From the IMG/VR virus record IMGVR_UViG_3300047499_000113, positions 1 to 64,000 of that record: a stretch of DNA of 64,000 bases. One strand, given 5' to 3'. Positions 1 through 15,700 of this stretch are shown piece after piece (position 1 is the stretch's first letter; each line of letters starts with the position of its first letter). Under the pieces are notes generated by a model. That model made no database searches and was not told the DNA's origin. It saw nothing but the letters and a program-made list of their open reading frames with translations. The position numbers and the translations under genes were made by a program.

Positions 1-435
1 GTAGACGCGTACGAGCAAATACTGGTTGCTCCGCAGGTTGTGGCCCTTGATGACCTTCGCCATCTGGCCAGGGAAGAGCGGGAAGGAGACCGGGCCAGGG
101 ATGTTGACCTTGCGGCCGACCAGGAGATCCGCTTGCGACGCCTTGCCCTGACCGCTCGGGTGCTTGTGGTCACCCTTGTCCGTGTACGCCGGGTTCTTCA
201 GGACGACGTAGTAAGCCTCCGGGGCCGTCACGTGGGTGTGAACGGCGCGCTCGACGGGCGCGTCCAAGAACTTCTTGGTCTTCGGATCGAAGACGACGAG
301 CTTGTCGCCGTCACCGAGCGTGACCTTGGTGGGTCCGACGTAGACGTTGACCTCGCCTTTCGTGTTGTCCCGAACGTGGATCCACTCGTTGGGTGCGAGG
401 ACGATGTCCCTGTTCCTGCGGTCTTCTTCGGCCAT
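1..435 (-). CDS. Major vault protein (MVP)-like protein, N-terminal part (runs off left edge)
   Basis: Not in ORF track. ATG at 435 preceded by AAGGAGG; open to base 1. Translation MAEEDRRNRDIVLAPNEWIHVRDNTKGEVNVYVGPTKVTL...VTAPEAYYVVLKNP...GRKVNIPGPVSFPLFPGQMAKVIKGHNLRSNQYLLVRVY matches MVP N-terminal repeats (cf. recalled human MVP YIHVLDQNSNVSRVEVGP, VTVPPRHYCTVANP, PFPLYPGE). Confidence 0.8.
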   Translation of the reverse strand, partial: MAEEDRRNRDIVLAPNEWIHVRDNTKGEVNVYVGPTKVTLGDGDKLVVFDPKTKKFLDAPVERAVHTHVTAPEAYYVVLKNPAYTDKGDHKHPSGQGKASQADLLVGRKVNIPGPVSFPLFPGQMAKVIKGHNLRSNQYLLVRVY

Positions 436-3230: not shown

Positions 3231-5303
3231 TTACACGTCCGAAAAGTCAATCGCGATGTCGGCGATCTTGTAGTTATCCTCAGCAACAGTTGTAAATGAC
3301 TGCTTGGCGGTTGACTTCTTGACTTTCTTGGCTTTGACGGGCGTCTTGGACTTGTCGGTGAGCAGACCCTGGAGAACGTCCTGCAGAGCGTTCTGCTCCA
3401 CGAACTTGAGGCCATCCTTGAGATTCTCGCCGGCGACTTTGTCCGCGAGCTTCTTCTTGGTCCGCAGGGCTTTGAGTACCTGGTGGTCGATGGTCTTGCT
3501 TTCATCACGCTTGCGGCCGAGGAAGTGATGGGCGACCACCATCTTGTGCAGCGAGCCGATGCGAAGCGCGCGTCCGATGAGCTGCAAGTAATCGCCCCAG
3601 CTCCACGGCAGGTCGAGCAAGCCGAAGTGCTCGGCTGAGTGCAGGTTGAGGCTTTCCGAGCCGGCGGTCGTGATGAGGATGACGTTCACGCCGGAGTTCA
3701 TGTCCTGGAACATCGCACGGTTCTTGTCGCGAACCTGTGCGTTGTTCTCTTTGCCCGTAATGCGCGTGCAGGCGATGTCCTTGTCCTTCAGGGCCTTCTC
3801 GACGAGCGAAATCATGCGCTCGAACTTCGAGAACACGATGACCTTCTGATCGGCCGCCTCGGTCTGCAGAAGCTCGATGAGTGCATCGATCTTGGACGAC
3901 GGGCCCTTGTACGGCTCGCCGTTCTCGTCCATCAGCAGCTCGGGCGAATCGCACGCCTGCTGGCACATCACCATCGCCGACAGAAGCTCGGAGTCGGACG
4001 TGTCCGGGTCGTTGTTCTTGTTGATGAGCCCGTTCTCGGCCAGGTCATACAGCTCTTCCTGCAGCTCGGTCAGCTCGCACTCGATCTCCATCGAGACAAG
4101 CTCCGGAAGCTCCTTGGCCACGTCGTGCTTTTTGCGCGACAGGTAGTAGGGCTCGATTATCTCGACAAACTTCTCGAGGTTCTTGTACCCGACGACCAGC
4201 AGGACGTTGCGCCCTCCGCCGATGGACTGCAATCTCGTGACGCAGAACTGCTCGTGGAAATGCGAGATCTTGGGGAAGAGCGACGGTTGCAGAATCCGGA
4301 AGAGGCTCCAGAATTCCATGAGTCGGTTCTTGACTGGCGTCGCCGTCAGGCCGTAGGCGCGCTGGGCCACCTTCGCCAGCATTGCCGTCTTCTCGTGGAA
4401 CTGGCTCTTGTGATTCTTGAGTTTGTGCATCTCATCCATGACGAGAAGGAACTTCAGATGCGGATGAGCCTTTCGCATCTTCTGCACGTAGTCGATGATC
4501 CCCGGAACCTTCTTCGGGGGAGCGAACTCGTCGCGCAGCGCCTTGAGCTTGGCCTCCGCGTCTACGGCTGACTGCCTCCGCTCGAGGTAAGCTGTGAAGA
4601 CCTGCGCGTCCGCTTCCGTGAACATGCTGGGCGGCTGCGGCTTCGTCTCGTAATTGACGAAATCCGCCAGGTATTGGTGCACCTGCCACGGGTGCTCACG
4701 GAAGTAGGCGTCGAACTTCTCCTTCTCAGCTTCGAAAAGGGTCGCCGCTTCTTTGCTCGCCGCTCGAGCGGCGTCCAATTCCTTCTGGAAGCCCTTGCGC
4801 GGTGACTTGCCCTTCTCCTTGATCACCGCCTCGTGCATGTCGTACATGATCATGTCGTACGACAAGATCAGCAGGCGTTTCTTGTCCGGGTCGTACGTGG
4901 AAAAGAACTGCTCGTAGATTTCGTGCCGGCGAAAGGGTGAGCCGTGGACTGTGACGGCCTCCATGCCCTGCATGAAGCGCTTCGTCTCGCCTTCCCACTG
5001 GAAGAGTGCCGACTTTGTGGTGATGATGATAGGAACGTATTCCGGCTCCTTCATCCAAATGTAGCCGATGGTCGACAGGACCTCGAGCGTCTTGCCGAGG
5101 CCGGTGTCGTCTCCGAGGAGCATGCGCTCGACTTGGAGCATGTTGAGGACGCCCTGCGCCTGGTAGACGCGCAGCTTGACGTCCCTCTCGTCGCCGTACT
5201 CATCCGTGTACTTTTCCCTAAGATAGGGAGACGGCTTGAGCGCCAGATCCGGCTTGGTCCGAATCTGTCGGATTTTGGCGAGAAGATCGGGTGAGATCAT
5301 CAC
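3231..5303 (-). CDS. SNF2-family (SF2) helicase/ATPase
   Basis: LGDDTGLGKT (I), VMDEMH (II), LTATPVKN (III), KVIVFS (IV), AGSESLNL (V), QLIGRALRIG (VI). Confidence 0.9.
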   Translation of the reverse strand: MMISPDLLAKIRQIRTKPDLALKPSPYLREKYTDEYGDERDVKLRVYQAQGVLNMLQVERMLLGDDTGLGKTLEVLSTIGYIWMKEPEYVPIIITTKSALFQWEGETKRFMQGMEAVTVHGSPFRRHEIYEQFFSTYDPDKKRLLILSYDMIMYDMHEAVIKEKGKSPRKGFQKELDAARAASKEAATLFEAEKEKFDAYFREHPWQVHQYLADFVNYETKPQPPSMFTEADAQVFTAYLERRQSAVDAEAKLKALRDEFAPPKKVPGIIDYVQKMRKAHPHLKFLLVMDEMHKLKNHKSQFHEKTAMLAKVAQRAYGLTATPVKNRLMEFWSLFRILQPSLFPKISHFHEQFCVTRLQSIGGGRNVLLVVGYKNLEKFVEIIEPYYLSRKKHDVAKELPELVSMEIECELTELQEELYDLAENGLINKNNDPDTSDSELLSAMVMCQQACDSPELLMDENGEPYKGPSSKIDALIELLQTEAADQKVIVFSKFERMISLVEKALKDKDIACTRITGKENNAQVRDKNRAMFQDMNSGVNVILITTAGSESLNLHSAEHFGLLDLPWSWGDYLQLIGRALRIGSLHKMVVAHHFLGRKRDESKTIDHQVLKALRTKKKLADKVAGENLKDGLKFVEQNALQDVLQGLLTDKSKTPVKAKKVKKSTAKQSFTTVAEDNYKIADIAIDFSDV

Positions 5304-5311
5304 CCGATCTT
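5283..5311. promoter_or_regulatory. Perfect 12-bp inverted repeat over the SNF2 start codon
   Basis: AAGATCGGGTGA (5283-5294), 5-nt loop, TCACCCGATCTT (5300-5311); contains the GTG/ATG start. Confidence 0.6.
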
Positions 5312-5326
5312 ACAACTATCGAAGCG

Positions 5327-5767
5327 TCAGTGCTTGGAAGCGCCGCCGCAGTTCCAGCCCATTGCCTGCACGTCAGCCGAGGTCTTGGCACCGAGCAGAT
5401 CGTTGCAGGTGAGGCCCTGCTGGGTCTTGGGGTTGCGGATGACGCGGTTGGCCTGCGCGAGCGACAGAACCTTGGCGCAATCCGCCTGCTGGGCGCAGCC
5501 CATGGCGGCCATCTGAGCGCATGCCTTGGCGCACGGATCCGTGGGAGCCGGAGGAGCTGCATCCTGCGCCGGAGTCGGAGCGGGAGCTGCATCGACCGCA
5601 GGCGTCGGCGTGGGGGCCGAATCCATGGTCGGGACAGGCGGCGGAGGGCTTCCGTCGGGTCCTCCGTCCGGTGCCGGTGGGTTGGGCGGGGTCGGAGGGC
5701 ACCCCGCCATGCCGAGCGTCGACACGGCCAGGAAGAGCCCGAGAAGGGGGATCGCTGTCTTCTTCAT
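5327..5767 (-). CDS. Lipoprotein with Pro-rich linker and Cys-rich C-terminal domain
   Basis: Likely start ATG 5767 (MKKTAIPLLGLFLAVSTLGMAGC, lipobox), overlapping the peptidase stop; PPTPPNPPAPDGG linker; six Cys in the C-terminal domain. Confidence 0.75.
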   Translation of the reverse strand: MKKTAIPLLGLFLAVSTLGMAGCPPTPPNPPAPDGGPDGSPPPPVPTMDSAPTPTPAVDAAPAPTPAQDAAPPAPTDPCAKACAQMAAMGCAQQADCAKVLSLAQANRVIRNPKTQQGLTCNDLLGAKTSADVQAMGWNCGGASKH

Positions 5768-6636
5768 CACGCAGCCGCCTTCTGGACCTGGACGTCCATC
5801 ACGTAAAGCTCCCAGGCCGCCTTGACCCACGCCTCGGAAACGAGGCAGCGACCGTTGTCACACCAGCCGGTACCCCAGCTGTTGGTGAGGATGAAGGTGC
5901 GGGTTCCGTCCGCGTTGGTGGTGTAGCCCGACAGGTAGATGGCGTGGCCACCGCCGTTCGGGTCGTTCGTGTTCGGAGGCTGCGCCACCTGGCCCGGCTG
6001 CAGCTGCTCGAACGCCGTGTCGACGAACGCCGCGACGTAGACCGGGAAACCGGCGGCGAGAGCCGCAGCCACCTGATCCGAAACGTTCGCTGCACTCGGG
6101 TCGATGGCGTACTCGCCCGTGACGATGGTGGTGCCAGCTGCCTGGAGCTGGTTGGCGTCCACCTCGTTGTTGACGTTCGCCGGCTGAGCCGTCGTGTCAG
6201 CATCCGACCAGATGTCGGAGTTGCGGCCGTCCGGAGTCGGGCCCTGCATCGGAGCAACGCCGAACTGCGCGCATGCCGTGAACACGTCCGCGGGCTCGGC
6301 GCCCGAGTCGGTGAGAAGCGGCAGGGGCTGACCCGCCGGCGTCTGCGCCGCGCGCTCGATTCCTCGAGTAGCGGCGTACGTCTCGCGCGGCGAAGGCTCG
6401 AACCCGATCTGGATGCCCGCCTTGCGGCAAGCTGTGGAGGTGCTGCCCGACAGCGAGTGCGCCGTGCAGGAGCCCGTCTGGCCCTGATCGAGCCGCGGGG
6501 GCTCCCACTGGGACAGGTCGACGGACGCCGGAACGGTGGCCGCAAGGAGTGCGGCAATCGCCGGGTGGGTGGCCGCCGCTTTCTTGGAGGCGACCTTCGA
6601 CGGATGACTGCGCTTTGCACCCTTTGCGAACGGCAT
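5767..6636 (-). CDS. Papain-family (C1A) cysteine peptidase
   Basis: DQGQTGSCTAH (oxyanion Gln plus catalytic Cys), GGHAIYLSGY (His), TNSWGTGW (Asn); PASVDL mature N-terminus after a short basic propeptide. Confidence 0.9.
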   Translation of the reverse strand: MPFAKGAKRSHPSKVASKKAAATHPAIAALLAATVPASVDLSQWEPPRLDQGQTGSCTAHSLSGSTSTACRKAGIQIGFEPSPRETYAATRGIERAAQTPAGQPLPLLTDSGAEPADVFTACAQFGVAPMQGPTPDGRNSDIWSDADTTAQPANVNNEVDANQLQAAGTTIVTGEYAIDPSAANVSDQVAAALAAGFPVYVAAFVDTAFEQLQPGQVAQPPNTNDPNGGGHAIYLSGYTTNADGTRTFILTNSWGTGWCDNGRCLVSEAWVKAAWELYVMDVQVQKAAA

Positions 6637-7059
6637 TTACTTGGCTCCCGCTGCCTTCTGGGCTCGGACGTTGGACTGCAGCGTCTTGAAGTTCGCGAGG
6701 AGAGAGACCGACACGCAATTGGGCAGGCCGTACGCCGGCTTGCCGGAACCACATTTCATGTCGCTCGCCGCCACGGCCGCGCCAGCTTCCTGCGGCTGGT
6801 CGTAGTAATTGATGATGCTGGCGATGATCTGCTCGACATCAGCCAGGGTCGAGCCGATGCACGCGCCGGTGATCTTGAGCGGGTCGGTCACGCCTTGGAA
6901 CATCTCGGCGATGACGCAGCTGGCGATCTGGCCAACGTCCGTCGTCACCTGGCCGCTATTGCTGGCCCACCAGCCACAGCCAGTCTGCGTTGCTGTGGTG
7001 CCGCCGATAGCGACACCCATACCCACGATGATTGCGATTGGAGCCAGTTTGCGAATCAC
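6637..7059 (-). CDS. Putative lipoprotein / membrane-anchored protein
   Basis: MIRKLAPIAIIVGMGVAIGG...QTGC signal with lipobox-like Cys; further Cys pairs; coupled to both neighbours. Confidence 0.65.
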   Translation of the reverse strand: MIRKLAPIAIIVGMGVAIGGTTATQTGCGWWASNSGQVTTDVGQIASCVIAEMFQGVTDPLKITGACIGSTLADVEQIIASIINYYDQPQEAGAAVAASDMKCGSGKPAYGLPNCVSVSLLANFKTLQSNVRAQKAAGAK

Positions 7060-7508
7060 TTGCCACCTCCATCAGCCGCCGGCGCAGCAGGTGCCGGGGT
7101 GGGCGTTTTGCCCTGGGAAGACTTGTGCGCGATGAGGTGGGCATGGCACGCAGCGCCCGCGCCAGCTGACGACAGCGCCATGACGCCAGCGATGATGGCG
7201 TTCAGAATGGACGAGCCGTTGACACCGGAAGCGCCCTGCAGCGACAGACCGAAGGCCGTCAGGAATGAACCAGCCAGAGTCAGGTAGGGGATCCACGCCT
7301 TAGGCGTGGTCGCGACCCCGAAGAGACTGCCAGTGTTGACGGCCTGTCCAATGAAGCCCGCGAGCAGAGCGACGATGGTCACGATCGCCGTCTGTGTCGA
7401 AATCGTGACAGCCGCAGCGGGGGCCGCAGTCTGCGCGAAAGCGAGGCTCGCGAAGGACATGACGACGCCGAAAGTGAGGGCGAACGTCAGGGTAGATCGG
7501 AACTTCAT
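7056..7508 (-). CDS. Holin-like multi-pass membrane protein
   Basis: 150 aa; signal-like N-terminus and three hydrophobic segments (AIVTIVALLAGFIG, KAWIPYLTLAGSFLTAFGL, ILNAIIAGVMAL); GAGG RBS; first gene of the cassette downstream of the tail genes. Confidence 0.55.
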   Translation of the reverse strand: MKFRSTLTFALTFGVVMSFASLAFAQTAAPAAAVTISTQTAIVTIVALLAGFIGQAVNTGSLFGVATTPKAWIPYLTLAGSFLTAFGLSLQGASGVNGSSILNAIIAGVMALSSAGAGAACHAHLIAHKSSQGKTPTPAPAAPAADGGGK

Positions 7509-7613: not shown

Positions 7614-8222
7614 ATGAAGTCGCTGAAGGTTGTCTCGGTCAGTCTGGTGTTCGTTGCAGCGCTCGTGGGCTGCACTTCCGACGCGTTCACGTCGGGCGAC
7701 CTGCCGGACTCGGGAACCGACTCCGGAGACCCGACCGAAGGTTCGGTCGGAAACGACTCCGGCGGCGACAGCGCCAAGGTGGGAGATCCCGATACTGGCG
7801 TGGATGCGGGCCCAGGGATCGACACCGGCACGACGGACACCGGGACGCCCGACTCCGGCACCGACACGGGGACGACAGACTCCGGGACAGTGGATTCCGG
7901 CACCGACACGGGGACGACAGACTCCGGCGCCGACGCCGCCGACGCCGCCGACGCGAGCTGTTTCACGGTCCCCTCTGGCTCCACCGGAGTCACCTGCGAC
8001 TCCTGCATGAAGTCGTCGCCGTGCGCCAGTCAGCGAGACATCTGCATCGCTCAGTGCGGTCCCTCGGGATGCGCCGACGCCTGGGAGGGTTTCCTCGCCT
8101 GCATCGACCTGAACCCGGATGCCGGCGGGACTCTCTGCGCCAGCACCTGGCTCTCGGACAGCCCCGTGGAGGCCAACCTAGCCTCCTGCGGCAACACCTT
8201 CTGCAGCAGCCAGTGTCAGTAG
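7614..8222 (+). CDS. Myxobacterial-type Cys-rich lipoprotein (moron-like, opposite strand)
   Basis: GGAGGAG RBS, ATG 7614; MKSLKVVSVSLVFVAALVGC lipobox; DSG/DTG/DAG low-complexity linker; Cys-rich C-terminal domain. Confidence 0.8.
   Translation: MKSLKVVSVSLVFVAALVGCTSDAFTSGDLPDSGTDSGDPTEGSVGNDSGGDSAKVGDPDTGVDAGPGIDTGTTDTGTPDSGTDTGTTDSGTVDSGTDTGTTDSGADAADAADASCFTVPSGSTGVTCDSCMKSSPCASQRDICIAQCGPSGCADAWEGFLACIDLNPDAGGTLCASTWLSDSPVEANLASCGNTFCSSQCQ
7854..7927 (+). repeat. 32-bp direct repeat inside lipoprotein linker
   Basis: TCCGGCACCGACACGGGGACGACAGACTCCGG at 7854-7885 and 7896-7927 (encodes SGTDTGTTDSG twice). Confidence 0.9.
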
Positions 8223-8223
8223 G

Positions 8224-8850
8224 TCACTTGGGCTTCTGAACGAGGCCCATGCGCTCGGCAAGAGAGCGCATGACAGCATCACGCTCCTGGTCGTCCAGTT
8301 CATCCCAAGTCTTGCCGGCAGCGGAAGCCTTCGGCGAGGCGAGCTTCGCCTCGAGGCGAGCTTTACCGATCTGAGCCGCCGGGTGATGCTGGATAGCCGG
8401 AACGATGGTCACCGTAGGCTGGGCGGGCACCGTATCCGCAGGGGCGACCCCAGGAACGATGGAGCGATTCACCAGCAATTGGTTGCCGGACACGTTTGTC
8501 TTGGTGGCGACTTCGTACACGTGAGTGACGGTTTCGAAAACGACGGCGACACGCTTGCCGTAGTCGGCATACCAAAGATCACGAGTGGCCTGGTCCATGG
8601 CGTGGCTGATGTAAGCCGAGGGGAGCGCTGCCATCACCAAGGGCTGAGACGGGTCCTTGGACCAAAGACTACCCTGGATGGCATCTCCGAAATCGGAGAA
8701 CGACACATCATTCGGGAGCGTGTACTTGACGCCCGCCACGTAGAACACGCCGGCGCGAAGTATGTATTGCTGGCCAACAATATCGATGCGGTAGTTCAGA
8801 TCCAACTGACCGGCCGCGCCGACACCGTTATGGTAGTAGATCCCGAACAT
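8224..8850 (-). CDS. Hypothetical protein, possible tail-fibre-associated/chaperone
   Basis: 208 aa, TAATG-coupled to the upstream fibre gene; helical C-terminus. Confidence 0.6.
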   Translation of the reverse strand: MFGIYYHNGVGAAGQLDLNYRIDIVGQQYILRAGVFYVAGVKYTLPNDVSFSDFGDAIQGSLWSKDPSQPLVMAALPSAYISHAMDQATRDLWYADYGKRVAVVFETVTHVYEVATKTNVSGNQLLVNRSIVPGVAPADTVPAQPTVTIVPAIQHHPAAQIGKARLEAKLASPKASAAGKTWDELDDQERDAVMRSLAERMGLVQKPK

Positions 8851-11800
8851 TATTGTCTACCCGTAATGATGAAGGTGAAACCGCCGGACTGATTCGCGTT
8901 GTTGAAGTTAATGGACGTTGAGCTGATACCGCTCGATAGAACTGCCTGAGCCTGACTGAACGAAGACGTGTACATCGAGGCGAGCTGCAGGGACGGCCCC
9001 AGACCAGACACGAAGAAGAGCGGAGTGATTGCACAGGCAATCGATCCCTGACCGGCTCCAGTATCTGTGTTCGACGGGTTGGCATAGAAGTTAATAAGGA
9101 TCTGTCCGCCAAACCCTCCGCCACCGTTGAAAATGGCATAGCTGTGCACGTTCCAGGAGTCGTACTCCTGGAACGTGGGGTGTCCACCACTGTCAGTAGT
9201 GACAAAGATCGTGCCCCACGCCTTGATGACGTTTGCGCCGTTGACGGTGTTCTGAAGCGCCGCGGCGTTGTATGTGTCACCCAGGTGGGTGAGAGCGATG
9301 CCGTTGTCGCTGAATCCCTGGATGCAGGTCCAGCTCCCGTCCGACCAGTTTCCCCCGGGCTGGAAAACTGAGAAGTTGTACATGTACCCGGCCCCGTAGT
9401 TGCTACTCCCGAAGAGGAAGTTGCTTCCAGACCAGACGGTCATGAAGGCGTTCTGTCCAGGAACGTCAGGAACCCACACGCTTCCGTTCCAACTGGCGTT
9501 AGTTGTGATGGCATACCAGTCGTTGTTGCCGGGCCCGTATCCGCCGTTGCCGGAAAAATTCCAGCCTCGGTAGTGGCGAATACAGACTCCTTGGCCTTGA
9601 CCACCGAGAGCCCACGTGATGTGACCGTTATTCCCATCCGGAGCGACGGCGGCTGCGTTAGCAATTTGCACCGAAGTCCCAGAGATCACGTTGACGATCT
9701 GGAAATGCCCGTTGTTGTTGCCGTTGGCAGCTCCAGTGAAATACAGGTACATGCCCTGCATGTTGTTCGTCATACTGGCGAGGCCCGTGATCGTGGCGAG
9801 CCCGGCAGACACAGCCGAAATGGTGCAACCTCCGTTGCGGCCAGCAGCGAACAAATAATCCGAGCCCTGCGGCCCAGTGCCGTACTCCGCTACCAGGATG
9901 CGCATTCCGCTGTCCGGGTGTGCCGGAACTGAGATGCGCGCGGCCAACTCAGAGGCGAGAGTCGCGGGAGCCAGCTCTCCGAGACGGAGATTGTTCGCCG
10001 TAACGATCCCGGCGTTGCCCTGGTTTCCGTTGATGGAGAACGGGAGAATGCTGTTCGGAGCGCTCGCGGGACCGTTTGGGGCCCACGTCGCCCACGGCGT
10101 GTTGTCGGCGGCTCCGCGGTGCCAATGGAGGAATTGGCTGCCGAAACCGCCGCCCGCGAGCATTTGAACAGCGTTGGCAGCCACGCCGTTGACGTCTTTC
10201 GCCCACGCAACACCATTCCAGGCCGCGTTGATCGTGAACCAATAGTCCGTCTCGTTGGACGGATTCATCTGTGCGTAGATGCGGATGCTGGGGCTCGCGG
10301 TGGGGCTCTGAGCCTCCCAAATCAGAGTGAAGGTACTCGGCGCGGTCTGCGCGAGAAACCGCGGGATGAGATTCTCGTTGCTGGCGGTCGATTGCGTGCC
10401 GGCCAGGATGAAGGCCAGCGCTCCGTTGAGCGCTCCGGACGGGTCGAAACCAACGGGCGGCGTGCCCGTACCGAGCGGAGAACCAGCAAACGTGAACGGG
10501 CTGGCGACCGCGGGGCCCGCGTAGAGAAACTCCATTTTGGGCTGGCCCGTGACGGTGCTCTGCCCGATGTAAACGGCGGACGCCGATTGCCCGGCCGTAT
10601 CTTTCCTCCAGTTGATGGGGAACCCGACAGGACCGTTCCAATACGCGTTGCAGGTGACCCACAGTCCAGCTTGCGAGTCAGCGAAGAGCCGCATGATCTG
10701 CTGAGCATTGGAGCCGGTCAGACCAGCGACCGACACTCCCTCCCACAGGAGGGTCATGCCACTGCCTTGCGAACTCGAGAACGGCGTAACGATGCGCGGC
10801 GTCTGGTTCGCCTGCAGGTACCCGAGGTTACGCGCTCCGAGTGTGAGCGAGTCGATGCTCAGCACGTCGACGATCTTGCGCAGCAAGTCTGGATTGATCT
10901 TGCCGTCCGGACCGAGAAGCGCCGAGATGCCAAGATTTTCCGTGCCCGCCCCAGGCTGTGCCAGCTGCGGGTCGTCGGTGGCAAGGAACTTCTCGGTGGT
11001 GGTCTCGATGTTCTCCGGCACCTCCCCGAACTCCATCATCTCGGGGATCATCGCGTGCACGACGGGAGGCGTGACCGCCTCGATGCCGATTGCCGTAGTA
11101 CCCGTGACGCTGGTGCCTGACAGACCGAGCTTCGCCATCACGGCAGAAGAACCCGAGACCGTGATGCTCGCCGGAGTTCCGTACGGATCGTCGGTGGTGT
11201 GGTCGGGGCAAACGAAGGCGATTTCTTCGACCGTCGTCGCATTGCCGAATGGCTTGGCCACCACGGAGCCCGAATAAACTCCAGGCACAAGGCCGAGTTT
11301 GTCGAGGGTAGTCGTGAAGTTGTTGGTCGGCAGCGGGCTGGCGCCGAAGAGGTCACCCGCCATGATCTGCACGGTGGAACTCGGACCGCTCGTCAGATGG
11401 CTGGTGATTTGGAGAGTCCCGAAATTCGAAACCGCAGCCGATCCCTGGGCAGCCTGTCCGGCCGTGCTGATGGCGGCGTTGATGAAGTTCACTAGGTCGG
11501 ATGTCGAGTAGACGCCCGTGGTCGGATAGATCTGAATCGGCGTGTTGCCGTTCAGAACGATGAAGAACATGTCCTGGCCAGTGATGAACTGCCAGGGCCC
11601 AGCAACAGCACCGATGACGCCGCCACGACCGGCCTCGGTCCCCGCCGGGAATCCAGCTCCAGCGGCTGCCGCGTTCCAGGCCGCATTCACGGCGCTGATG
11701 ACGTCTTGCGCACCGGTCGGCGCCACGCCAAACGTGATAGTGAGGACGTAGGTCTGGATGCTGAAGTTGTGGGACGGATTCGGATAGAGCGCCGGATTGA

Positions 11801-12716
11801 CCGTATTGACCGTGACCGTGAAGCTGTCGCTCGTGGTCAGCGAAGAAAAGTTGCCGCCACTCGTGATGACCTTGCCGGGTACGGAGCCCTGACGGACGTA
11901 CGACACCACGAACTTCGGATTGTTCGAGATGCCCGGGATTTGCTGCAGCCGTCCGTAGATGGACTGGCCAGGCGGATAGAGCGGTATGTTTCCGAGGCCG
12001 CTGACGTTGATCTGAATGGGGGTCTGCGTGATCGCCGGCGACGAGTCCGGGTTGCGGAGCTGGATGAATCCGCCGAAACCATCCGTCGACTGCGTGATGA
12101 TGCCGCGCACCGGCGAAGAAATGCCCGTGACAGTGGCCGTGTTTCCTGGCGCCAATCCGAGCGCAGTGCACACGCCGACCGTGACGTCATTGACCGTCAG
12201 GAAGGCAGAAGAGCCAGTCGTGTAGCCCGAGGGACCCGCAGACTGGAGAACGAGCTGGCCGTTGATGTTTTGCGCGACCGGAGATGACGGGTTGACTCCG
12301 GCGACAGTGAGGGCCGCGTTGATACGCGCTGCCACCTTGGACGTCGTGATGTACGGATTGCCGCCGATGTTGACGACGTCGCTCGGTTGGAACGTGATGA
12401 GGACAGGGTTGCTCGAGTTGACGTTCGGGAGCGTGATGGTGAAAGACGCGCCCGCGACGACGGGCGACACGAACGGACCCTGCGCGCCGATGATGAACGC
12501 CGACGCATCCGACTCCGCGCCGCCGGGCGTCTGCGTGATGGTCTGCTGCAGGAATTCGTTGTAGTAGTTTTCCGAGATCGTGTTCTGGATGGTCTGAACA
12601 GTGCCGCCAGGAACGTCCGGCGTGCCGAACGGAATGGGCGTCGCCACACCGATCGTGTCGATCCGGGTGAAGTACGACCGCTGGTCCTTGATCTGTTCTT
12701 TGCGCGGCTGAGTCAT
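8850..12716 (-). CDS. Large tail fibre / virion structural protein (1288 aa)
   Basis: G/S/T/N-rich; three INAA...LGL beta modules; three NA-x-WNG-(x)n-W-xx-D repeats; fibre-like C-terminus (KAWGTI). Confidence 0.7.
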   Translation of the reverse strand: MTQPRKEQIKDQRSYFTRIDTIGVATPIPFGTPDVPGGTVQTIQNTISENYYNEFLQQTITQTPGGAESDASAFIIGAQGPFVSPVVAGASFTITLPNVNSSNPVLITFQPSDVVNIGGNPYITTSKVAARINAALTVAGVNPSSPVAQNINGQLVLQSAGPSGYTTGSSAFLTVNDVTVGVCTALGLAPGNTATVTGISSPVRGIITQSTDGFGGFIQLRNPDSSPAITQTPIQINVSGLGNIPLYPPGQSIYGRLQQIPGISNNPKFVVSYVRQGSVPGKVITSGGNFSSLTTSDSFTVTVNTVNPALYPNPSHNFSIQTYVLTITFGVAPTGAQDVISAVNAAWNAAAAGAGFPAGTEAGRGGVIGAVAGPWQFITGQDMFFIVLNGNTPIQIYPTTGVYSTSDLVNFINAAISTAGQAAQGSAAVSNFGTLQITSHLTSGPSSTVQIMAGDLFGASPLPTNNFTTTLDKLGLVPGVYSGSVVAKPFGNATTVEEIAFVCPDHTTDDPYGTPASITVSGSSAVMAKLGLSGTSVTGTTAIGIEAVTPPVVHAMIPEMMEFGEVPENIETTTEKFLATDDPQLAQPGAGTENLGISALLGPDGKINPDLLRKIVDVLSIDSLTLGARNLGYLQANQTPRIVTPFSSSQGSGMTLLWEGVSVAGLTGSNAQQIMRLFADSQAGLWVTCNAYWNGPVGFPINWRKDTAGQSASAVYIGQSTVTGQPKMEFLYAGPAVASPFTFAGSPLGTGTPPVGFDPSGALNGALAFILAGTQSTASNENLIPRFLAQTAPSTFTLIWEAQSPTASPSIRIYAQMNPSNETDYWFTINAAWNGVAWAKDVNGVAANAVQMLAGGGFGSQFLHWHRGAADNTPWATWAPNGPASAPNSILPFSINGNQGNAGIVTANNLRLGELAPATLASELAARISVPAHPDSGMRILVAEYGTGPQGSDYLFAAGRNGGCTISAVSAGLATITGLASMTNNMQGMYLYFTGAANGNNNGHFQIVNVISGTSVQIANAAAVAPDGNNGHITWALGGQGQGVCIRHYRGWNFSGNGGYGPGNNDWYAITTNASWNGSVWVPDVPGQNAFMTVWSGSNFLFGSSNYGAGYMYNFSVFQPGGNWSDGSWTCIQGFSDNGIALTHLGDTYNAAALQNTVNGANVIKAWGTIFVTTDSGGHPTFQEYDSWNVHSYAIFNGGGGFGGQILINFYANPSNTDTGAGQGSIACAITPLFFVSGLGPSLQLASMYTSSFSQAQAVLSSGISSTSINFNNANQSGGFTFIITGRQ

Positions 12717-12728
12717 CGAATGTCCCTA

Positions 12729-15700
12729 TCAGAACAAGAGGTACCAGAATTCGACGATGTCGGTCGTCAGAAGAGCTGGATTGCTCCCGGAGACGATGTA
12801 TGTGACGGTTTGGTTGGTGGTGCCGCCAACTGTGTAGTTGAGCCCGTACTGGAGTTTGACGCCGTTGAGGAACATCTGCACGGCGGTCGGATCGAGCGGG
12901 CGGTTCGGAAGGGTGAAGGTGAGCTGCCCGTCCGAGGTGACCGGAAGGGTGATCTGCTCCTGCGAGTTGAGGGACACGTCCGACGACCCGAAGAACAGGG
13001 GGTTGTCGAAGATGTTCGTAACGAAAAGGGCCGGCGGAACCGGGAGAATGCCGGTGTTGACGTAGCCACGGCGCTTCTCCAAGGGCTTACCCAGGAGACG
13101 GTACCTGTCGACAGCGGTGAACCCTTCGTTGGTACCGGCAGCCGAGTGCGACACGTTCGTATCGCGGAAATAGGCCGGCACCGCCTGGGTGACGACGAAC
13201 ATCTGCAGCTCGTTGCCCATGTGGATCTCGGTGGAGCCCACAGACTCCGGCTGAGAACGCACAAGGAATGCGGAGCCGACGAGAAGCGACCCGGCGTTGA
13301 TGTTCGGGCGGACTTTCGGGAACCTCGAGGAGATCGGACCACCGACCCAAGGTGGCGTGACCGACCAGGCCGCACCTCCACGCGTCGTCTTGAACACCGT
13401 CGTACTGGCAGGATTCGCGGTGCCGTCGACTCGAATGACGGCTTCGGAACCAACGCCAGTCGTGCCCGATGTGTTGCCGCAGATGAACTCCGTGCCCTCC
13501 CAGGTCGATTCGCCAGGCGCGCTCGGGGCGAGCGACGCCTCGTAGTTCTGGAAGGTGAACGTGCCGACTGCGTTGGCGCCGACACCCGTGGAGTTGATCT
13601 GCTGGTAGAGGGTCTTGCCGACGAAGTCCTTGTCTCGGAAGTAGATGCCCATCGGCAGTTGCGAAGTGGCACCTGCGAATTCCGGCGGGACGAAGTTGTC
13701 GTAGACCGGATCCAAGCCACCGATCTTGGTCGGTGGGCGAGTCGCGACACCTGTGGGCGGAGTCGGTGAGTTAACGACCGGAAAGAGCTGGTCCGACCAG
13801 TCCTCGTAACCAACACGGTTCGCCGAGAAGCGACGTGCGAGATCGAGCAGGGTCCCGGCGTAATCCGGCGGGTTGTTCGGTGCCTCAAACGTGTCGAGGA
13901 GGGGTAGCGGCTGCGAACCCGAGAGACGACCCGTCCCGAGCGACATCACGAAGCTCGTGGACGCGAGCACCTCGAAACCGGTCTCGTTCGGGAGAGCCAG
14001 GCTCGAGATGGGACCCAGCGGGCTCGTGAAGATCGACGTGGCTTCTCCGACCGTCAGCGGTCCGAGCCTGTAGAGGTCGTCCGAATAGGCGTTCTGAGTT
14101 CCGAATGGATCGCCTTGGTACGGCTGGCGGCTGTAGTAGATCGTCAGCTCGTTGTTCGAAGCATTGCTCGAGAGCGGCGCCGGCGCGATGATGCCGATGG
14201 TGCCGTCCTGCGAGGTCGAGAACTGATCCTGCAGGATGACTCCGCCGCCCGTGTTCTTGGCGACGCAAACGCGTCCGTTGGTCTGCAGGAAGCCTCGATC
14301 GAATCCGAACAGGACGCACTCGACAACGAACTGGGCATTGTTGAAGTTCGTACCCGAAGGTGCCTTCGTGAAGTCCAGGCAATCGGCCGAGAGGATGAAG
14401 TATGGGTCTCCGTTGGCGTCCACGTTGAGCAGGACGGTCGGGCCGTCGTAGCTGTCGTGCAGGAGGTTGACGTCTGCTCCCGGCTGGCCAACGAACTGGC
14501 GATTGTTATTGAACGGGCTCGAGATGGGCTGCACCGCCGATCCCTGACGGAGATAGACGCCGGTGATGCGCGCCGGCGCGAGGAACGGCGGGAACTGAAT
14601 GCCCTGGAAGGGGCCGCCGTTGGCCGACTGGAGAGAGTTGTTCGTGTACTTGGTACCGAAGATGGAGAGAATACCCGCCTGCGTGCCGTAGGTCTCGCCA
14701 ACATTTGGCGTGACGATGTAGTAGCCCGGCGCGCTCGGATACGAGACGATATTCTCGTTGTAGCTCGAGTTGTTCAGGTTCGGGCCTTCTTGCGCCACGA
14801 ACATGAAATTCAGGCCGCTGGGAAACACGGCGTTGGTCGTCGCCTGCAGAGGGATGTGATGCAGACCCGGCCGCGGCAGATACTCCCACGGGATCTCGAA
14901 GTAGAGGCTGTTGACACCGTGGTAGAACAGGTTGAGGGCGTCGATGGTCGTCTGAGGCACGACCGGGTGCACGATATTGACGCCGTTCTGGTCCAGGCTC
15001 GGCATCGCGCCCTGGTACTGGATCGTCGGATTGAAGTACCAGTTGAGCTGCTGGCCGTTGCGCGCGAGAAGCTGCGGGACACGGACTTCGCGGTACGGAG
15101 CCGCGTAGACGGTCTTGCTGCCCGGGTCGACCATCACCTCGGAAGTCCGCGCGAGATTCCGGTTTACACCGGTCTGCACGTACGGCGAGTCGCCAAGATA
15201 CGTCGGGATCATGCGCGAAATGCCGGACAGGCCGCCGCGCAGAAGGGTCTGCGTCGTGTTGGACGCCGACCCGCGGTACCAAACCGTGTGGATGTAGTCC
15301 GGCTTGTGAGACAAGCCGCGACCAGCTCCGTAGACGACGGCGAAGTCGATGTGCATCACGACATTCGTGACGTAAGGAATCGCCGTGTTGCCCTGGAGAG
15401 CGTCCTTGAACTCCTGCAGTTCGGTGTCGACGCCACCGCTTTGGAAGCGGATGACGAGGTTTCCGTTCACATCGGTGGTGACGCTCAGGCCTTGACCGCT
15501 CTTGAGGACCTTGTTTCCCTGCGTCGGGAAGAGAAGATCCGGGTTGGAAGTCGTAGGCGCGGTCGTACCGGCCGACGTGACGACCTCGCCAGTCGTCATC
15601 GTGCCCGAACCGCCTGTGCACCCCGTGAAGCTCGAGCCGGAGATGGAGGTGTAGTTGACCGTCGAGCCGTTGATGTTGATGGTTCCGCCGCTCGAGGAGA

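What the first reader, a model, noticed from the sequence alone, without database searches (positions are those of the whole stretch)
5327..7508. Lysis-like cassette with a papain-family protease where the endolysin should be
Seen: four translationally coupled genes after the tail module: holin-like membrane protein, lipoprotein, C1A cysteine peptidase with intact Q/C/H/N residues and no signal peptide, and a Pro-rich lipoprotein. No muramidase, amidase or CHAP gene is recognisable in the window. Established: holin-endolysin-spanin cassettes sit in this position and o-spanins are often Pro-rich lipoproteins. Inference: a non-canonical lysis or exit system in which a holin-released papain-like enzyme attacks peptide cross-links, envelope proteins or extracellular matrix, aided by two lipoproteins.
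Basis: partly seen in the sequence, partly recalled or inferred. Interest (0 to 1): 0.7.

Follow-up and report, generated by a model that had tools for sequence, protein, structure and literature searches.

The report
Phage lysis cassette with docked papain-like protease
A huge uncultured soil/moss phage carries a conserved four-gene envelope cassette (holin-like membrane protein, anchored periplasmic protein, latent papain-family protease, proline-rich lipoprotein predicted to bind that protease) that in related phages sits beside ordinary cell-wall-cutting enzymes, so the protease is most likely an extra, previously undescribed helper in bursting the host, not a substitute for the endolysin.

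Summary
Four tightly coupled minus-strand genes (7508-5327) encode a 3-TM holin-like protein, an N-terminally anchored Cys-containing periplasmic protein, a signal-less xylellain-type C1A peptidase with intact Gln/Cys/His/Asn, and a Pro-rich lipoprotein with a 6-Cys domain.

The cassette recurs, at 37-97% peptidase identity, in about 15 independent phage contigs: huge phages, small siphovirus-like phages and temperate phages. It always lies after tail genes. In five of these contigs it lies beside recognisable muralytic enzymes (Rv2525c/GH25-like, SLT, GH25, GH19-like endolysin).

So this is a lysis-module component, but it accompanies the endolysin rather than replacing it. The window's own 240-kb record encodes a lysozyme-fold + PG_binding_1 protein and an Amidase_2 protein elsewhere.

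New points:
- g1 and g2 are one fused protein in most relatives.
- The peptidase's N-terminus superposes on zymogen prosegments, which suggests a latent enzyme.
- The model supports binding of the lipoprotein's 6-Cys domain to a family-specific surface of the peptidase (score 0.82, best control 0.00). A correlated loop/indel pattern agrees with this interface.

The substrate is unknown. No cultured phage carries the module. About 1,000 sequence clusters exist in metagenomes.

The parts
7056..7508 (-). g1: holin-like membrane protein, 150 aa. Sec-type signal (MKFR...AFA|Q), three TM helices, basic Pro/Ala-rich C-terminal tail. Inferred N-out/C-in class-I-like topology.
   Evidence: ORF and sequence. 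Codon score 29.7. No Pfam, PHROG, NCBIfam or PADLOC match. Homologous 3-TM domain lies upstream of the peptidase in relatives. A 201-nt moss metatranscriptome contig is identical to 7066-7266 (weak evidence).
6637..7059 (-). g2: N-terminally anchored (signal-anchor or atypical lipobox TQTGC) periplasmic helical domain with 5 Cys, 140 aa. In most relatives it is the C-terminal part of a g1-g2 fusion, preceded by an internal lipoprotein-like signal.
   Evidence: Fusions in L034, L040, L005, L023, L024, L027-L030, L032 and L037. Split form also in L121 and L122. Alignment A7.
5767..6636 (-). g3: xylellain-type short C1A (papain-family) cysteine peptidase, 289 aa, no signal peptide. Catalytic Q51/C57/H231/N252. 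N-terminal segment of about 17-35 residues is placed like a zymogen prosegment. Family-specific insert GPTPDGRNSD.
   Evidence: Pfam and PHROG. 101 homologues. Invariant residues. AF2 model pLDDT 95.6. Foldseek 3OIS E 6e-14. VIA Z 26.5 to 3OIS, and prosegment superposition. Profile vs PDB E 1.3e-40. 1,030 cluster representatives at E<=1e-30.
5327..5767 (-). g4: lipoprotein (lipobox LGMAGC, +2 Pro) with a Pro-rich linker of about 55 residues and a C-terminal 6-Cys domain. Predicted binding partner of g3.
   Evidence: Homologues directly downstream of the peptidase in L003/L039, L005, L023, L024, L032, L034, L037, L040, L121 and L122. Complex prediction. Loop/indel co-variation.
7614..8222 (+). 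Divergently transcribed acidic, Cys-rich lipoprotein (lipobox LVGC). It is a conserved neighbour of the cassette. Whether it belongs to the module is uncertain.
   Evidence: codon score 24.8. The same opposite-strand lipoprotein lies between the fibre genes and the cassette in L121, L122 and L034. No family match.

Best explanation
The region is the holin-centred part of this phage's lysis module. It carries a conserved accessory protease system.

Proposed sequence of events:
1. g3, a xylellain-type C1A cysteine peptidase, is made without a signal peptide and accumulates in the cytoplasm. It is kept latent by its short N-terminal prosegment.
2. g1 (3 TM, N-out/C-in) acts as the holin. g2 is its periplasmic, membrane-anchored appendage, and is fused to it in most relatives.
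3. g4 is exported beforehand as a lipoprotein. Its long Pro-rich tether presents a disulfide-bonded 6-Cys domain in the periplasm.
4. When the membrane is permeabilised, g3 reaches the envelope. It is captured by the g4 domain at a family-specific surface away from the catalytic residues.
5. g3 then cleaves a peptide or protein target at the outer-membrane/cell-wall interface. Candidates are protein tethers of the outer membrane, peptide bridges or other envelope proteins.
6. This complements glycan-cutting endolysins that are encoded next to the cassette in relatives and elsewhere in this genome.

Shown: gene structure, catalytic integrity, fold, synteny, and linkage to muralytic genes.
Predicted by models: prosegment placement and the g3-g4 interface.
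Inferred: holin activity, timing, localisation, substrate.
For: Gene structure and coupling.

Catalytic tetrad invariant in 46 homologues. Fold Z 26.5 to xylellain. Profile E 1.3e-40.

Latency:
- No conserved disulfide cysteines and no signal peptide.
- Zymogens align from model residue 1, through the C-terminal part of their prosegments. Mature enzymes align only from residue 17-35.

Synteny: TM protein -> peptidase -> Pro-rich lipoprotein recurs in about 14 of 15 informative loci at 37-97% identity, on different phage backbones. These include huge phages (L003/L026/L034/L121), a siphovirus-like contig with Phage-tail_3 (L040), and a temperate one with an integrase (L037; L038, also temperate, carries the peptidase but neither the g1-g2 protein nor g4)..

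Muralytic genes adjacent to the cassette:
- L023: Rv2525c-like.
- L030: Rv2525c-like + SLT.
- L032: GH25.
- L040: Rv2525c-like.
- L038: protein matching solved phage endolysins, E 4e-8.

g3-g4 binding: the model supports binding; it does not show it.
- Score 0.82, best of 3 controls 0.00. This includes the control in which only g3 was replaced.
- The mark was reached by 58 of 80 solved complexes and 2 of 110 mismatched pairs.
- The three runs agree in at least 33% of contacts; partner pLDDT at least 62.
- These counts hold only roughly, because own alignments and three chains were used.
- The interface covers g3 89-108, 124-126 and 158-168, and the g4 segment NRVIR...QQGL.
- The g3 loop is 6-7 residues longer exactly in the 7 loci whose g4 has that segment. 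It is short in loci with the short g4 type or no g4.

Phage C1-like domains are found fused to PG-binding and muramidase domains in BFVD.

An intein sits in one homologue.
Against: - No experiment exists.
- g1 matches no known holin family.
- The substrate is unknown, and C1A enzymes are not known cell-wall hydrolases.
- g4 is absent from some loci that keep the peptidase (L029, L030, L038), so docking cannot be obligatory.
- g2's role is unexplained.
- The record is only about 56% complete, so other lysis genes may be missing from view.
- The host is unidentified, so a diderm envelope is assumed, not shown.
- Prosegment placement and the interface come from predicted models. The co-variation may reflect one or two evolutionary events.
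- RNA evidence is a single 201-nt contig.
Confidence: 0.45

Rival explanations
1. The peptidase is itself the endolysin of this phage: a peptidoglycan stem or cross-bridge endopeptidase released by the holin. In the huge-phage lineage it would have taken over from the glycosidases seen in smaller relatives.
For: - No muralytic gene lies next to the cassette in the window or in its huge-phage relatives.
- SLT, GH24, GH25 and CHAP are absent from the 240-kb record.
- Papain-fold enzymes (CHAP, NlpC/P60) are established endolysin domains (general knowledge).
- BFVD holds phage C1-like domains fused to PG-binding and muramidase domains.
Against: - The same record encodes a chitosanase/VgrG3-like lysozyme-fold protein with a C-terminal PG_binding_1 domain and an invariant Glu, and an Amidase_2 protein.
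- In 5 related loci the peptidase coexists with adjacent muralytic enzymes.
- The fold is that of classical C1A proteases acting on L-peptide bonds.
Confidence: 0.15
2. g3 and g4 are a toxin/immunity-like pair, as in T6SS Tae-Tai or staphopain-staphostatin. The periplasmic lipoprotein would inhibit the peptidase, either to prevent premature envelope damage and set a lysis threshold, or to protect lysogens and neighbouring infected cells from released enzyme.
For: - Gene order and 1-nt overlap: a signal-less papain-fold enzyme followed by a small exported disulfide-rich lipoprotein.
- Confident predicted binding specific to g3: score 0.82, best control 0.00. The mark was reached by 58 of 80 solved complexes and 2 of 110 mismatched pairs; run agreement at least 33%; partner pLDDT at least 62.
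- Some carriers are temperate (integrases in L037 and L038).
Against: - The confident contacts do not include Q51/C57/H231/N252 or their neighbours.
- The enzyme is cytoplasmic and the lipoprotein periplasmic until the membrane is breached.
- The peptidase is kept without g4 in L029, L030 and L038, which would be unexpected for an antidote.
- Latency is already provided by the prosegment-like N-terminus.
Confidence: 0.2
3. The cassette is not a lysis device. It could instead be an envelope-remodelling or superinfection-exclusion/receptor-destroying module, or a cytoplasmic protease acting on host or phage proteins (for example maturation, or processing of the g1-g2 fusion linker) that merely travels with membrane genes.
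For: - Phage lipoproteins such as T5 Llp and membrane proteins such as T4 Imm/Sp act in exclusion (general knowledge).
- g1 matches no holin family.
- The g1-g2 fusions have a cytoplasmic Pro/Gly-rich basic linker that a cytoplasmic protease could cut.
- The enzyme has no disulfides, which fits cytoplasmic folding.
Against: - Repeated adjacency to endolysin genes and the position after tail genes on unrelated backbones.
- No linkage to capsid or portal genes.
- The predicted partner is an exported protein.
- The peptidase is retained where g1 and g2 are already separate genes (window, L121, L122).
Confidence: 0.15

Closest known systems
Lambda-type holin-endolysin-spanin lysis cassettes (S, R, Rz/Rz1)
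   Same: - Compact, translationally coupled late genes placed after tail genes.
- A small 3-TM N-out/C-in membrane protein.
- A signal-less soluble enzyme that needs membrane lesions.
- A small Pro-rich lipoprotein and a membrane-anchored periplasmic protein.
   Different: - The soluble enzyme is a C1A protease, not a muralytic enzyme.
- The lipoprotein is predicted to bind the enzyme.
- The anchored periplasmic protein is usually fused to the holin-like protein and is globular and Cys-containing, not a coiled coil.
- The two 'spanin-like' genes are separated by the peptidase gene.
- Muralytic genes are additional or located elsewhere.
Xylellain (Xylella fastidiosa C1A peptidase, PDB 3OIS) and short bacterial C1A peptidases
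   Same: - Best structural and profile match (Z 26.5; E 1.3e-40).
- Single domain with a short N-terminal pro-region instead of an I29 propeptide.
- No conserved disulfides.
- PMC10380794 records that xylellain-type enzymes were acquired by tailed phages.
   Different: - Only 21-24% identity.
- The phage family has specific inserts (GPTPDGRNSD; the TPxGxxLPxL loop), a conserved basic N-terminal motif, and fixed neighbours (TM protein, lipoprotein).
- No function has been described for the phage enzymes.
Mycobacteriophage LysA/LysB two-enzyme lysis
   Same: A second, non-glycosidase enzyme in the lysis cassette deals with what holds the outer layer to the wall. LysA proteins also carry papain-like peptidase domains (weak BFVD matches).
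   Different: LysB is a serine esterase acting on mycolyl-arabinogalactan. Here the extra enzyme is a C1A protease with a lipoprotein partner, and the host envelope type is unknown.
Baculovirus V-CATH (viral cathepsin) with chitinase
   Same: A virus-encoded papain-family enzyme, made as a latent proform, acts at the terminal and release stage of infection together with a glycan-cutting enzyme.
   Different: That is a eukaryotic virus. V-CATH is a cathepsin L/F-type enzyme with a full propeptide and a secretory route. The resemblance is by analogy only.
T6SS papain-fold amidase effectors and periplasmic immunity proteins (Tae/Tai, Tse1/Tsi1)
   Same: A signal-less papain-fold enzyme is encoded directly upstream of a small exported, often lipidated, partner that binds it.
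   Different: There is no T6SS context. The predicted interface avoids the catalytic residues, and the partner is dispensable in some lineages.

Membership tests
Peptidase family C1A (papain family), xylellain-type short form | Catalytic Cys-His dyad with oxyanion-hole Gln and orienting Asn, in the conserved motifs | tested here: met
   Q51, C57 and H231 are invariant, and N252/S253/W254 are at least 90% conserved, in 46 homologues.
Peptidase family C1A (papain family), xylellain-type short form | Papain two-lobe fold and a profile match above the curated threshold | tested here: met
   Pfam PF00112: 36.1 bits against a cut-off of 20.7. AF2 pLDDT 95.6. VIA Z 26.5 and Foldseek E 6e-14 to 3OIS. 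Profile vs 3OIS E 1.3e-40.
Peptidase family C1A (papain family), xylellain-type short form | Short N-terminal pro-region instead of an I29 propeptide | tested here: met
   About 37 residues precede the mature-domain motif and there is no I29 match. Model residues 1-17 superpose on the C-terminal part of the prosegments of procathepsins B/K/L/S/H, propapain and xylellain. Actual autoinhibition and activation were not tested.
Holin (class I-like) | Small phage membrane protein with one or more TMDs and a charged cytoplasmic C-terminus, encoded in the lysis cassette | tested here: met
   g1 has a signal peptide, 3 hydrophobic helices and a basic tail. Relatives of the cassette lie beside endolysin genes.
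Holin (class I-like) | Sequence membership in a described holin family | tested here: not met
   g1 and the fused P0102 have no Pfam, PHROG, NCBIfam or PADLOC match.
Holin (class I-like) | Timed, lethal membrane hole formation that releases the endolysin | not testable with these tools
   Requires expression and complementation assays.
Two-component spanin (Rz/Rz1 type) | o-spanin: small outer-membrane lipoprotein, Pro-rich, with a lipobox | tested here: met
   g4 has lipobox LGMAGC, residues CPP at +1 to +3, and a Pro-rich linker. However, it also carries a folded 6-Cys domain of about 65 residues.
Two-component spanin (Rz/Rz1 type) | i-spanin: N-terminal TMD plus a periplasmic coiled-coil domain. 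The gene is embedded in, overlapping or directly adjacent to the o-spanin gene. | tested here: not met
   g2 is anchored, but its domain is short, Cys-containing and heterogeneous. It is usually fused to the holin-like protein. It is separated from g4 by the peptidase gene.
Canonical endolysin catalytic families (GH19/23/24/25/108, Amidase_2/3, CHAP, NlpC/P60, M15/M23) | g3 belongs to a known muralytic family | tested here: not met
   g3 matches only Peptidase_C1. CHAP, SLT, GH24 and GH25 are absent from the whole record. Amidase_2 and a lysozyme-fold + PG_binding_1 protein lie elsewhere.
Effector-immunity / protease-inhibitor pair | The partner binds the enzyme and occludes its active site | tested here: inconclusive
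   The model supports binding: score 0.82, best control 0.00. The mark was reached by 58 of 80 solved complexes and 2 of 110 mismatched pairs; run agreement at least 33%; partner pLDDT at least 62. The confident contacts lie outside the catalytic residues. Inhibition itself was not testable.

The most novel reading that the evidence does not exclude
A widespread but uncharacterised class of phage lysis factor: a latent papain-family protease that is released by the holin and captured by a dedicated Pro-rich outer-membrane lipoprotein. It would then proteolytically sever the protein links between outer membrane and cell wall, or destroy envelope proteins or receptors. That would make it a proteolytic alternative or complement to spanins for the last barrier in diderm hosts.
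Probability: 0.3. Interest if true: 0.8.

Novelty: new variant of a known kind. Interest (0 to 1): 0.62.

Why it matters
Phage lysis is described as holin + muralytic endolysin + spanin/disruptin, with an esterase added in mycobacteriophages. A conserved protease with its own lipoprotein partner inside lysis modules would add a proteolytic step to that scheme.

The family is large and unstudied:
- 1,030 cluster representatives at E<=1e-30.
- Carried by huge phages, small phages and temperate phages.
- No cultured phage among 50,697 records carries it; only one distant uncultured hit was found.

It would point to envelope protein tethers as a barrier that some soil bacteria present to phage release. 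It also offers a ready, testable enzyme/partner pair, and possibly new enzybiotic parts. The finding also corrects a tempting misreading: the absence of an adjacent endolysin in a huge phage does not mean the neighbour has taken its job.

Tried and rejected
1. blastn (distant mode) of the cassette against 50,697 phage records found nothing. tblastn of g3 gave one 30%-identical hit in an unannotated 595-kb uncultured phage.
2. A scan of 185,579 species genomes for the peptidase found no relative, so there is no prophage or host clue.
3. Host inference from the phage's UDP-glucose dehydrogenase gave only 44-50% identity to MAGs of Gemmatimonadota, Acidobacteriota, Myxococcota, Bacteroidota and others. 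The host stays unresolved. Atlas neighbours of g4 are Myxococcota lipoproteins at score 0.8, which is a lead only.
4. tblastn of the relatives' adjacent muralytic genes and small TM proteins against the own record found nothing.
5. Spanin idea (g2 periplasmic domain binding g4): in the three-chain job, the control that kept g2 and g4 but replaced g3 scored 0.00. That gives no support for a g2-g4 contact. It is not evidence against binding.
6. P0098, a 410-aa distant homologue with a weak r1t-holin match fused to a C1 domain, sits on a 1.4-kb contig and gave no context.
7. Multi-domain homologues (P0245, P0305) are tandem C1 domains only and add no functional clue.
8. L023 135-aa and L040 159-aa 'SLT-like' proteins are recognised only by motif. 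They have no Pfam or PDB sequence match. I count them as unconfirmed.
9. Foldseek of the PG_binding_1 protein against PDB recognised only the binding domain. The fold of the N-domain came from VIA-align.
10. The promoter/terminator scan found nothing above shuffled expectation.
Full report
**What the window is.** The window is the first 64 kb of a 240,015-bp IMG/VR virus record that CheckV rates about 56% complete. This suggests a huge phage of roughly 400 kb. The DNA occurs in several moss metagenomes. Almost all genes in the window run on the minus strand.

**The observation.** On the minus strand, four ORFs follow two giant, family-less proteins (12729-17579 and 8850-12716), a 208-aa protein, and a divergent plus-strand lipoprotein gene. 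Downstream come an SNF2 helicase, a 282-aa protein and a DnaB-like helicase.

| Gene | Coordinates (minus strand) | Length |
|---|---|---|
| g1 | 7508-7056 | 150 aa |
| g2 | 7059-6637 | 140 aa |
| g3 | 6636-5767 | 289 aa |
| g4 | 5767-5327 | 146 aa, from the ATG |

- The junctions are GTGA (4-nt overlap), TAA-ATG (abutting) and TGATG (1-nt overlap).
- A codon-usage model trained on the genome prefers these four frames over the long opposite-strand ORF.
- g1 has a Sec-type signal (…AFA|Q), three hydrophobic helices and a basic, Pro/Ala-rich tail.
- g2 has an N-terminal hydrophobic anchor ending in TQTGC, followed by a 110-residue domain with five Cys.
- g3 matches Pfam Peptidase_C1 above the gathering score and matches phrog_16701. 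It has no hydrophobic N-terminus.
- g4 has a lipobox (LGMAGC), a Pro-rich linker of about 55 residues and a 6-Cys domain.

**The peptidase.**
- A word-indexed search found 101 homologues, mostly 270-310 aa, many on contigs of 50-570 kb.
- An exhaustive profile search found 1,030 50%-identity cluster representatives at E<=1e-30.
- In 46 aligned homologues Q51, C57 and H231 are invariant and N252/S253/W254 nearly so. The family has its own motifs (LTDSGA; GPTPDGRNSD) and lacks the conserved papain disulfide cysteines.
- The AlphaFold model is confident (pLDDT 95.6).
- The closest solved structure is xylellain, 3OIS: Foldseek E 6e-14, VIA Z 26.5 over residues 1-285, family profile E 1.3e-40.
- PMC10380794 already notes that xylellain-type short C1A peptidases were acquired by tailed phages, without assigning a function.
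- Proenzymes (procathepsins B, K, L, S, H, propapain, pro-Der p 1) align from model residue 1, through the C-terminal part of their prosegments. Mature enzymes align only from residue 17-35.
- So the N-terminal segment, which carries a conserved basic motif (G6, K14), is modelled where zymogen prosegments lie. I infer a latent, cytoplasmically folded enzyme. This has not been shown.

**Synteny.** I examined contexts from IMG/VR, JGI, ENA, Logan and NCBI.
- In about 14 of 15 informative loci with 37-97% identical peptidases, a multi-TM protein lies upstream, and it is directly upstream in 13.
- A Pro-rich, Cys-rich lipoprotein follows with a 1-4-nt overlap in 11 of them.
- The backbones differ. 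They include huge phages with the same fibre…SNF2…DnaB neighbourhood (L003/L026/L039, L034, L121, L122), a siphovirus-like contig with phiJL001-gp84/BR0599/Phage-tail_3 tail genes (L040), and temperate elements with integrases 3-5 kb away (L037, L038).
- In most relatives g1 and g2 are one protein: three TMs, a cytoplasmic Pro/Gly-rich basic linker, and then a segment that looks exactly like a lipoprotein signal (lipoboxes VIGC, LTGC, AIAC, VVGC, LSGC, ASGC, VTGC, LAGC, VASC, LGAC) followed by the helical Cys-containing domain.
- The split seen in the window recurs in two independent assemblies (L121 at 97% and L122 at 77% peptidase identity), so it is not an assembly error.
- In the fused forms an internal in-frame start might also yield a separate lipoprotein. 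This is a speculation I could not test.

**Link to cell-wall enzymes.** Next to the cassette, relatives encode the following.

| Locus | Adjacent muralytic gene(s) | Evidence |
|---|---|---|
| L023 | Rv2525c-like (GH25-related) glycosidase | E 2e-9 |
| L030 | Rv2525c-like glycosidase + SLT domain | E 2e-14 and E 4e-5 |
| L040 | Rv2525c-like glycosidase | E 8e-15 |
| L032 | GH25 muramidase | E 7e-23 |
| L038 | protein matching solved phage endolysins, followed by three TM proteins | 9HNV E 4e-8; PWe2; SPN1S 4OK7 |

This places the peptidase in lysis modules. It also shows that it accompanies muralytic enzymes rather than replacing them.

**The window's own genome.**
- Scanning 178 predicted proteins and six-frame family searches found no SLT, GH24, GH25 or CHAP.
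- They did find an Amidase_2 protein (145695-144520).
- They also found a 369-aa protein with a C-terminal PG_binding_1 domain (225751-226860).
- That protein belongs to a family of more than 120 members on huge-phage contigs, with an invariant Glu46.
- Its model (pLDDT 93) places the N-domain in the lysozyme superfamily. Matches are GH46/GH80 chitosanases and the VgrG3 peptidoglycan-hydrolase domain at Z 9.2-10.9, then P22/T4 lysozymes and lytic transglycosylases at Z 5-6 (Atlas agrees).
- A weak, sub-threshold Glucosaminidase-like match lies in a 531-aa protein among the virion giants at the window's end.
- The claim that the protease stands in for a missing endolysin is therefore not supported, although the record is incomplete.

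**The lipoprotein partner.**
- I folded g3, the g2 periplasmic domain and mature g4 together, with their family alignments. The model supports binding of g4; it does not show it.
- The score was 0.82 and the best of 3 controls was 0.00.
- The mark was reached by 58 of 80 solved complexes and 2 of 110 mismatched pairs.
- The runs agree in at least 33% of their contacts, and the partner's pLDDT is at least 62.
- These counts hold only roughly here, because my own alignments and three chains were used.
- The control in which only g3 was replaced fell to 0.00, so the predicted partner of g4 is the peptidase.
- Confident contacts join g3 residues 89-108, 124-126, 158-168 and 287-288 to the g4 6-Cys domain (CAQQADC, NRVIR, QQGL, GWNCGG). 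The g3 residues form a family-specific loop and helices and do not include the catalytic residues.
- An independent pattern agrees with this. The g3 loop before the DSG motif is 6-7 residues longer (Cys-to-DxG distance 52-56) in all seven loci whose g4 has the R..R.P…LTC segment. It is short (45-47) in loci with the short 'CPEG' g4 type, a 4-Cys variant, or no g4. This may reflect few evolutionary events.

**Mechanism proposed (confidence about 0.45 for the whole chain).**
1. g3 accumulates latent in the cytoplasm.
2. g1 (with g2) permeabilises the inner membrane.
3. g4, pre-exported and tethered by its Pro-rich linker, captures g3 in the periplasm. Its +2 residue is Pro, so under the E. coli sorting rule it would go to the outer membrane. 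This is an inference.
4. The activated protease cuts a peptide or protein target at the outer-membrane/wall interface, complementing the glycan-cutting enzymes.

Shown: gene structure, catalytic integrity, fold, synteny, linkage to muralytic genes.
Model-predicted: prosegment position, g3-g4 interface.
Inferred: holin activity, order of events, localisation, substrate.

**Rivals.**
- g3 is itself the endolysin (0.15).
- g4 is an inhibitor or immunity protein (0.2). Against this: the interface avoids the active site, and g4 is missing in L029, L030 and L038 while the peptidase is kept.
- The module serves exclusion, receptor destruction or cytoplasmic processing rather than lysis (0.15).

**Comparison with known systems.**
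- It works like a lambda-type cassette in layout and in the logic of a signal-less enzyme plus a membrane lesion.
- It is not a member of any described holin, endolysin or spanin family.
- The enzyme is a bona fide C1A peptidase of the xylellain type.
- The nearest functional analogies are mycobacteriophage LysB (a second enzyme for the outer layer) and baculovirus V-CATH (a latent viral cathepsin acting at release). Both are analogies only.
- No paper in the searchable library describes a C1A peptidase in a phage lysis cassette.

**Verdict.** The feature is real and conserved. It is a new variant of the phage lysis cassette. Interest is moderate to high, because the family is large, mobile, unstudied and directly testable.

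Noticed in passing
window 1-435 (-), cut by the contig end: N-terminus of a major-vault-protein-like gene. It is 76% identical to the start of an 879-aa protein in the related contig L034, which carries Vault_3 and MVP_shoulder Pfam hits and lies downstream of DnaB. A vault-shell homologue in a phage is unusual.
   Followed up: partly
window 7614-8222 (+): A divergently transcribed acidic, Cys-rich lipoprotein (lipobox LVGC) is the only plus-strand gene in a long minus-strand array. An equivalent opposite-strand lipoprotein holds the same position in L121, L122 and L034. It has no family match.
   Followed up: partly
window 5285-5309: A perfect 10-bp inverted repeat (GATCGGGTGA / TCACCCGATC, 5-nt loop) lies right after the g4 stop codon and spans the GTG start (5303) of the SNF2 helicase gene. 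It could be a terminator or a translational control hairpin.
   Followed up: no
window 7066-7266: A 201-nt contig from a moss metatranscriptome (filed twice, as X10 and X11) is identical to the 3' half of g1. This hints at expression in situ. DNA carry-over cannot be excluded.
   Followed up: partly
own record outside the window: G000 95678-96628 (-): A strong match to Pfam Volactin (E 2e-74), an actin-family cytoskeletal protein, encoded by the phage.
   Followed up: no
own record outside the window: G000 140639-145695: A 665-aa membrane-anchored GT51 peptidoglycan glycosyltransferase (PF00912, E 2e-45) lies next to a VWA protein and the Amidase_2 protein. This is a phage-encoded wall-synthesis enzyme beside a wall-cutting one.
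   Followed up: no
own record outside the window: G000 224562-226860: The lysozyme-fold + PG_binding_1 protein (225751-226860) is preceded by a 199-aa protein with one TM helix, a helical periplasmic stretch and a Pro-rich tail (224562-225161). This may be a second lysis-related locus.
   Followed up: partly
P0342 (peptidase homologue); L121 4867-7870: One peptidase homologue carries an intein (Hint + LAGLIDADG) near the catalytic Cys region. The SNF2 helicase of the 97%-related contig L121 carries a LAGLIDADG insertion that is absent from the window.
   Followed up: no
L005 5767-7278; L040 5054-5350; L024 6953-7390; L028 6998-7501: Relatives add further exported proteins to the cassette. L005 has a 503-aa lipoprotein with a weak GDSL/SGNH esterase match. 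Several loci have small lipoproteins with a CCP…CGG Cys-rich domain.
   Followed up: partly
own record, 0-106 kb: Auxiliary genes seen in the Pfam sweep: UDP-glucose dehydrogenase, a radical-SAM/B12-binding protein, collagen-repeat proteins, and an O-methyltransferase. Further on: GDP-mannose dehydratase, Tpt1/KptA, a sigma-70-like factor, NAD-dependent DNA ligase, ThyX and adenylosuccinate synthetase.
   Followed up: no
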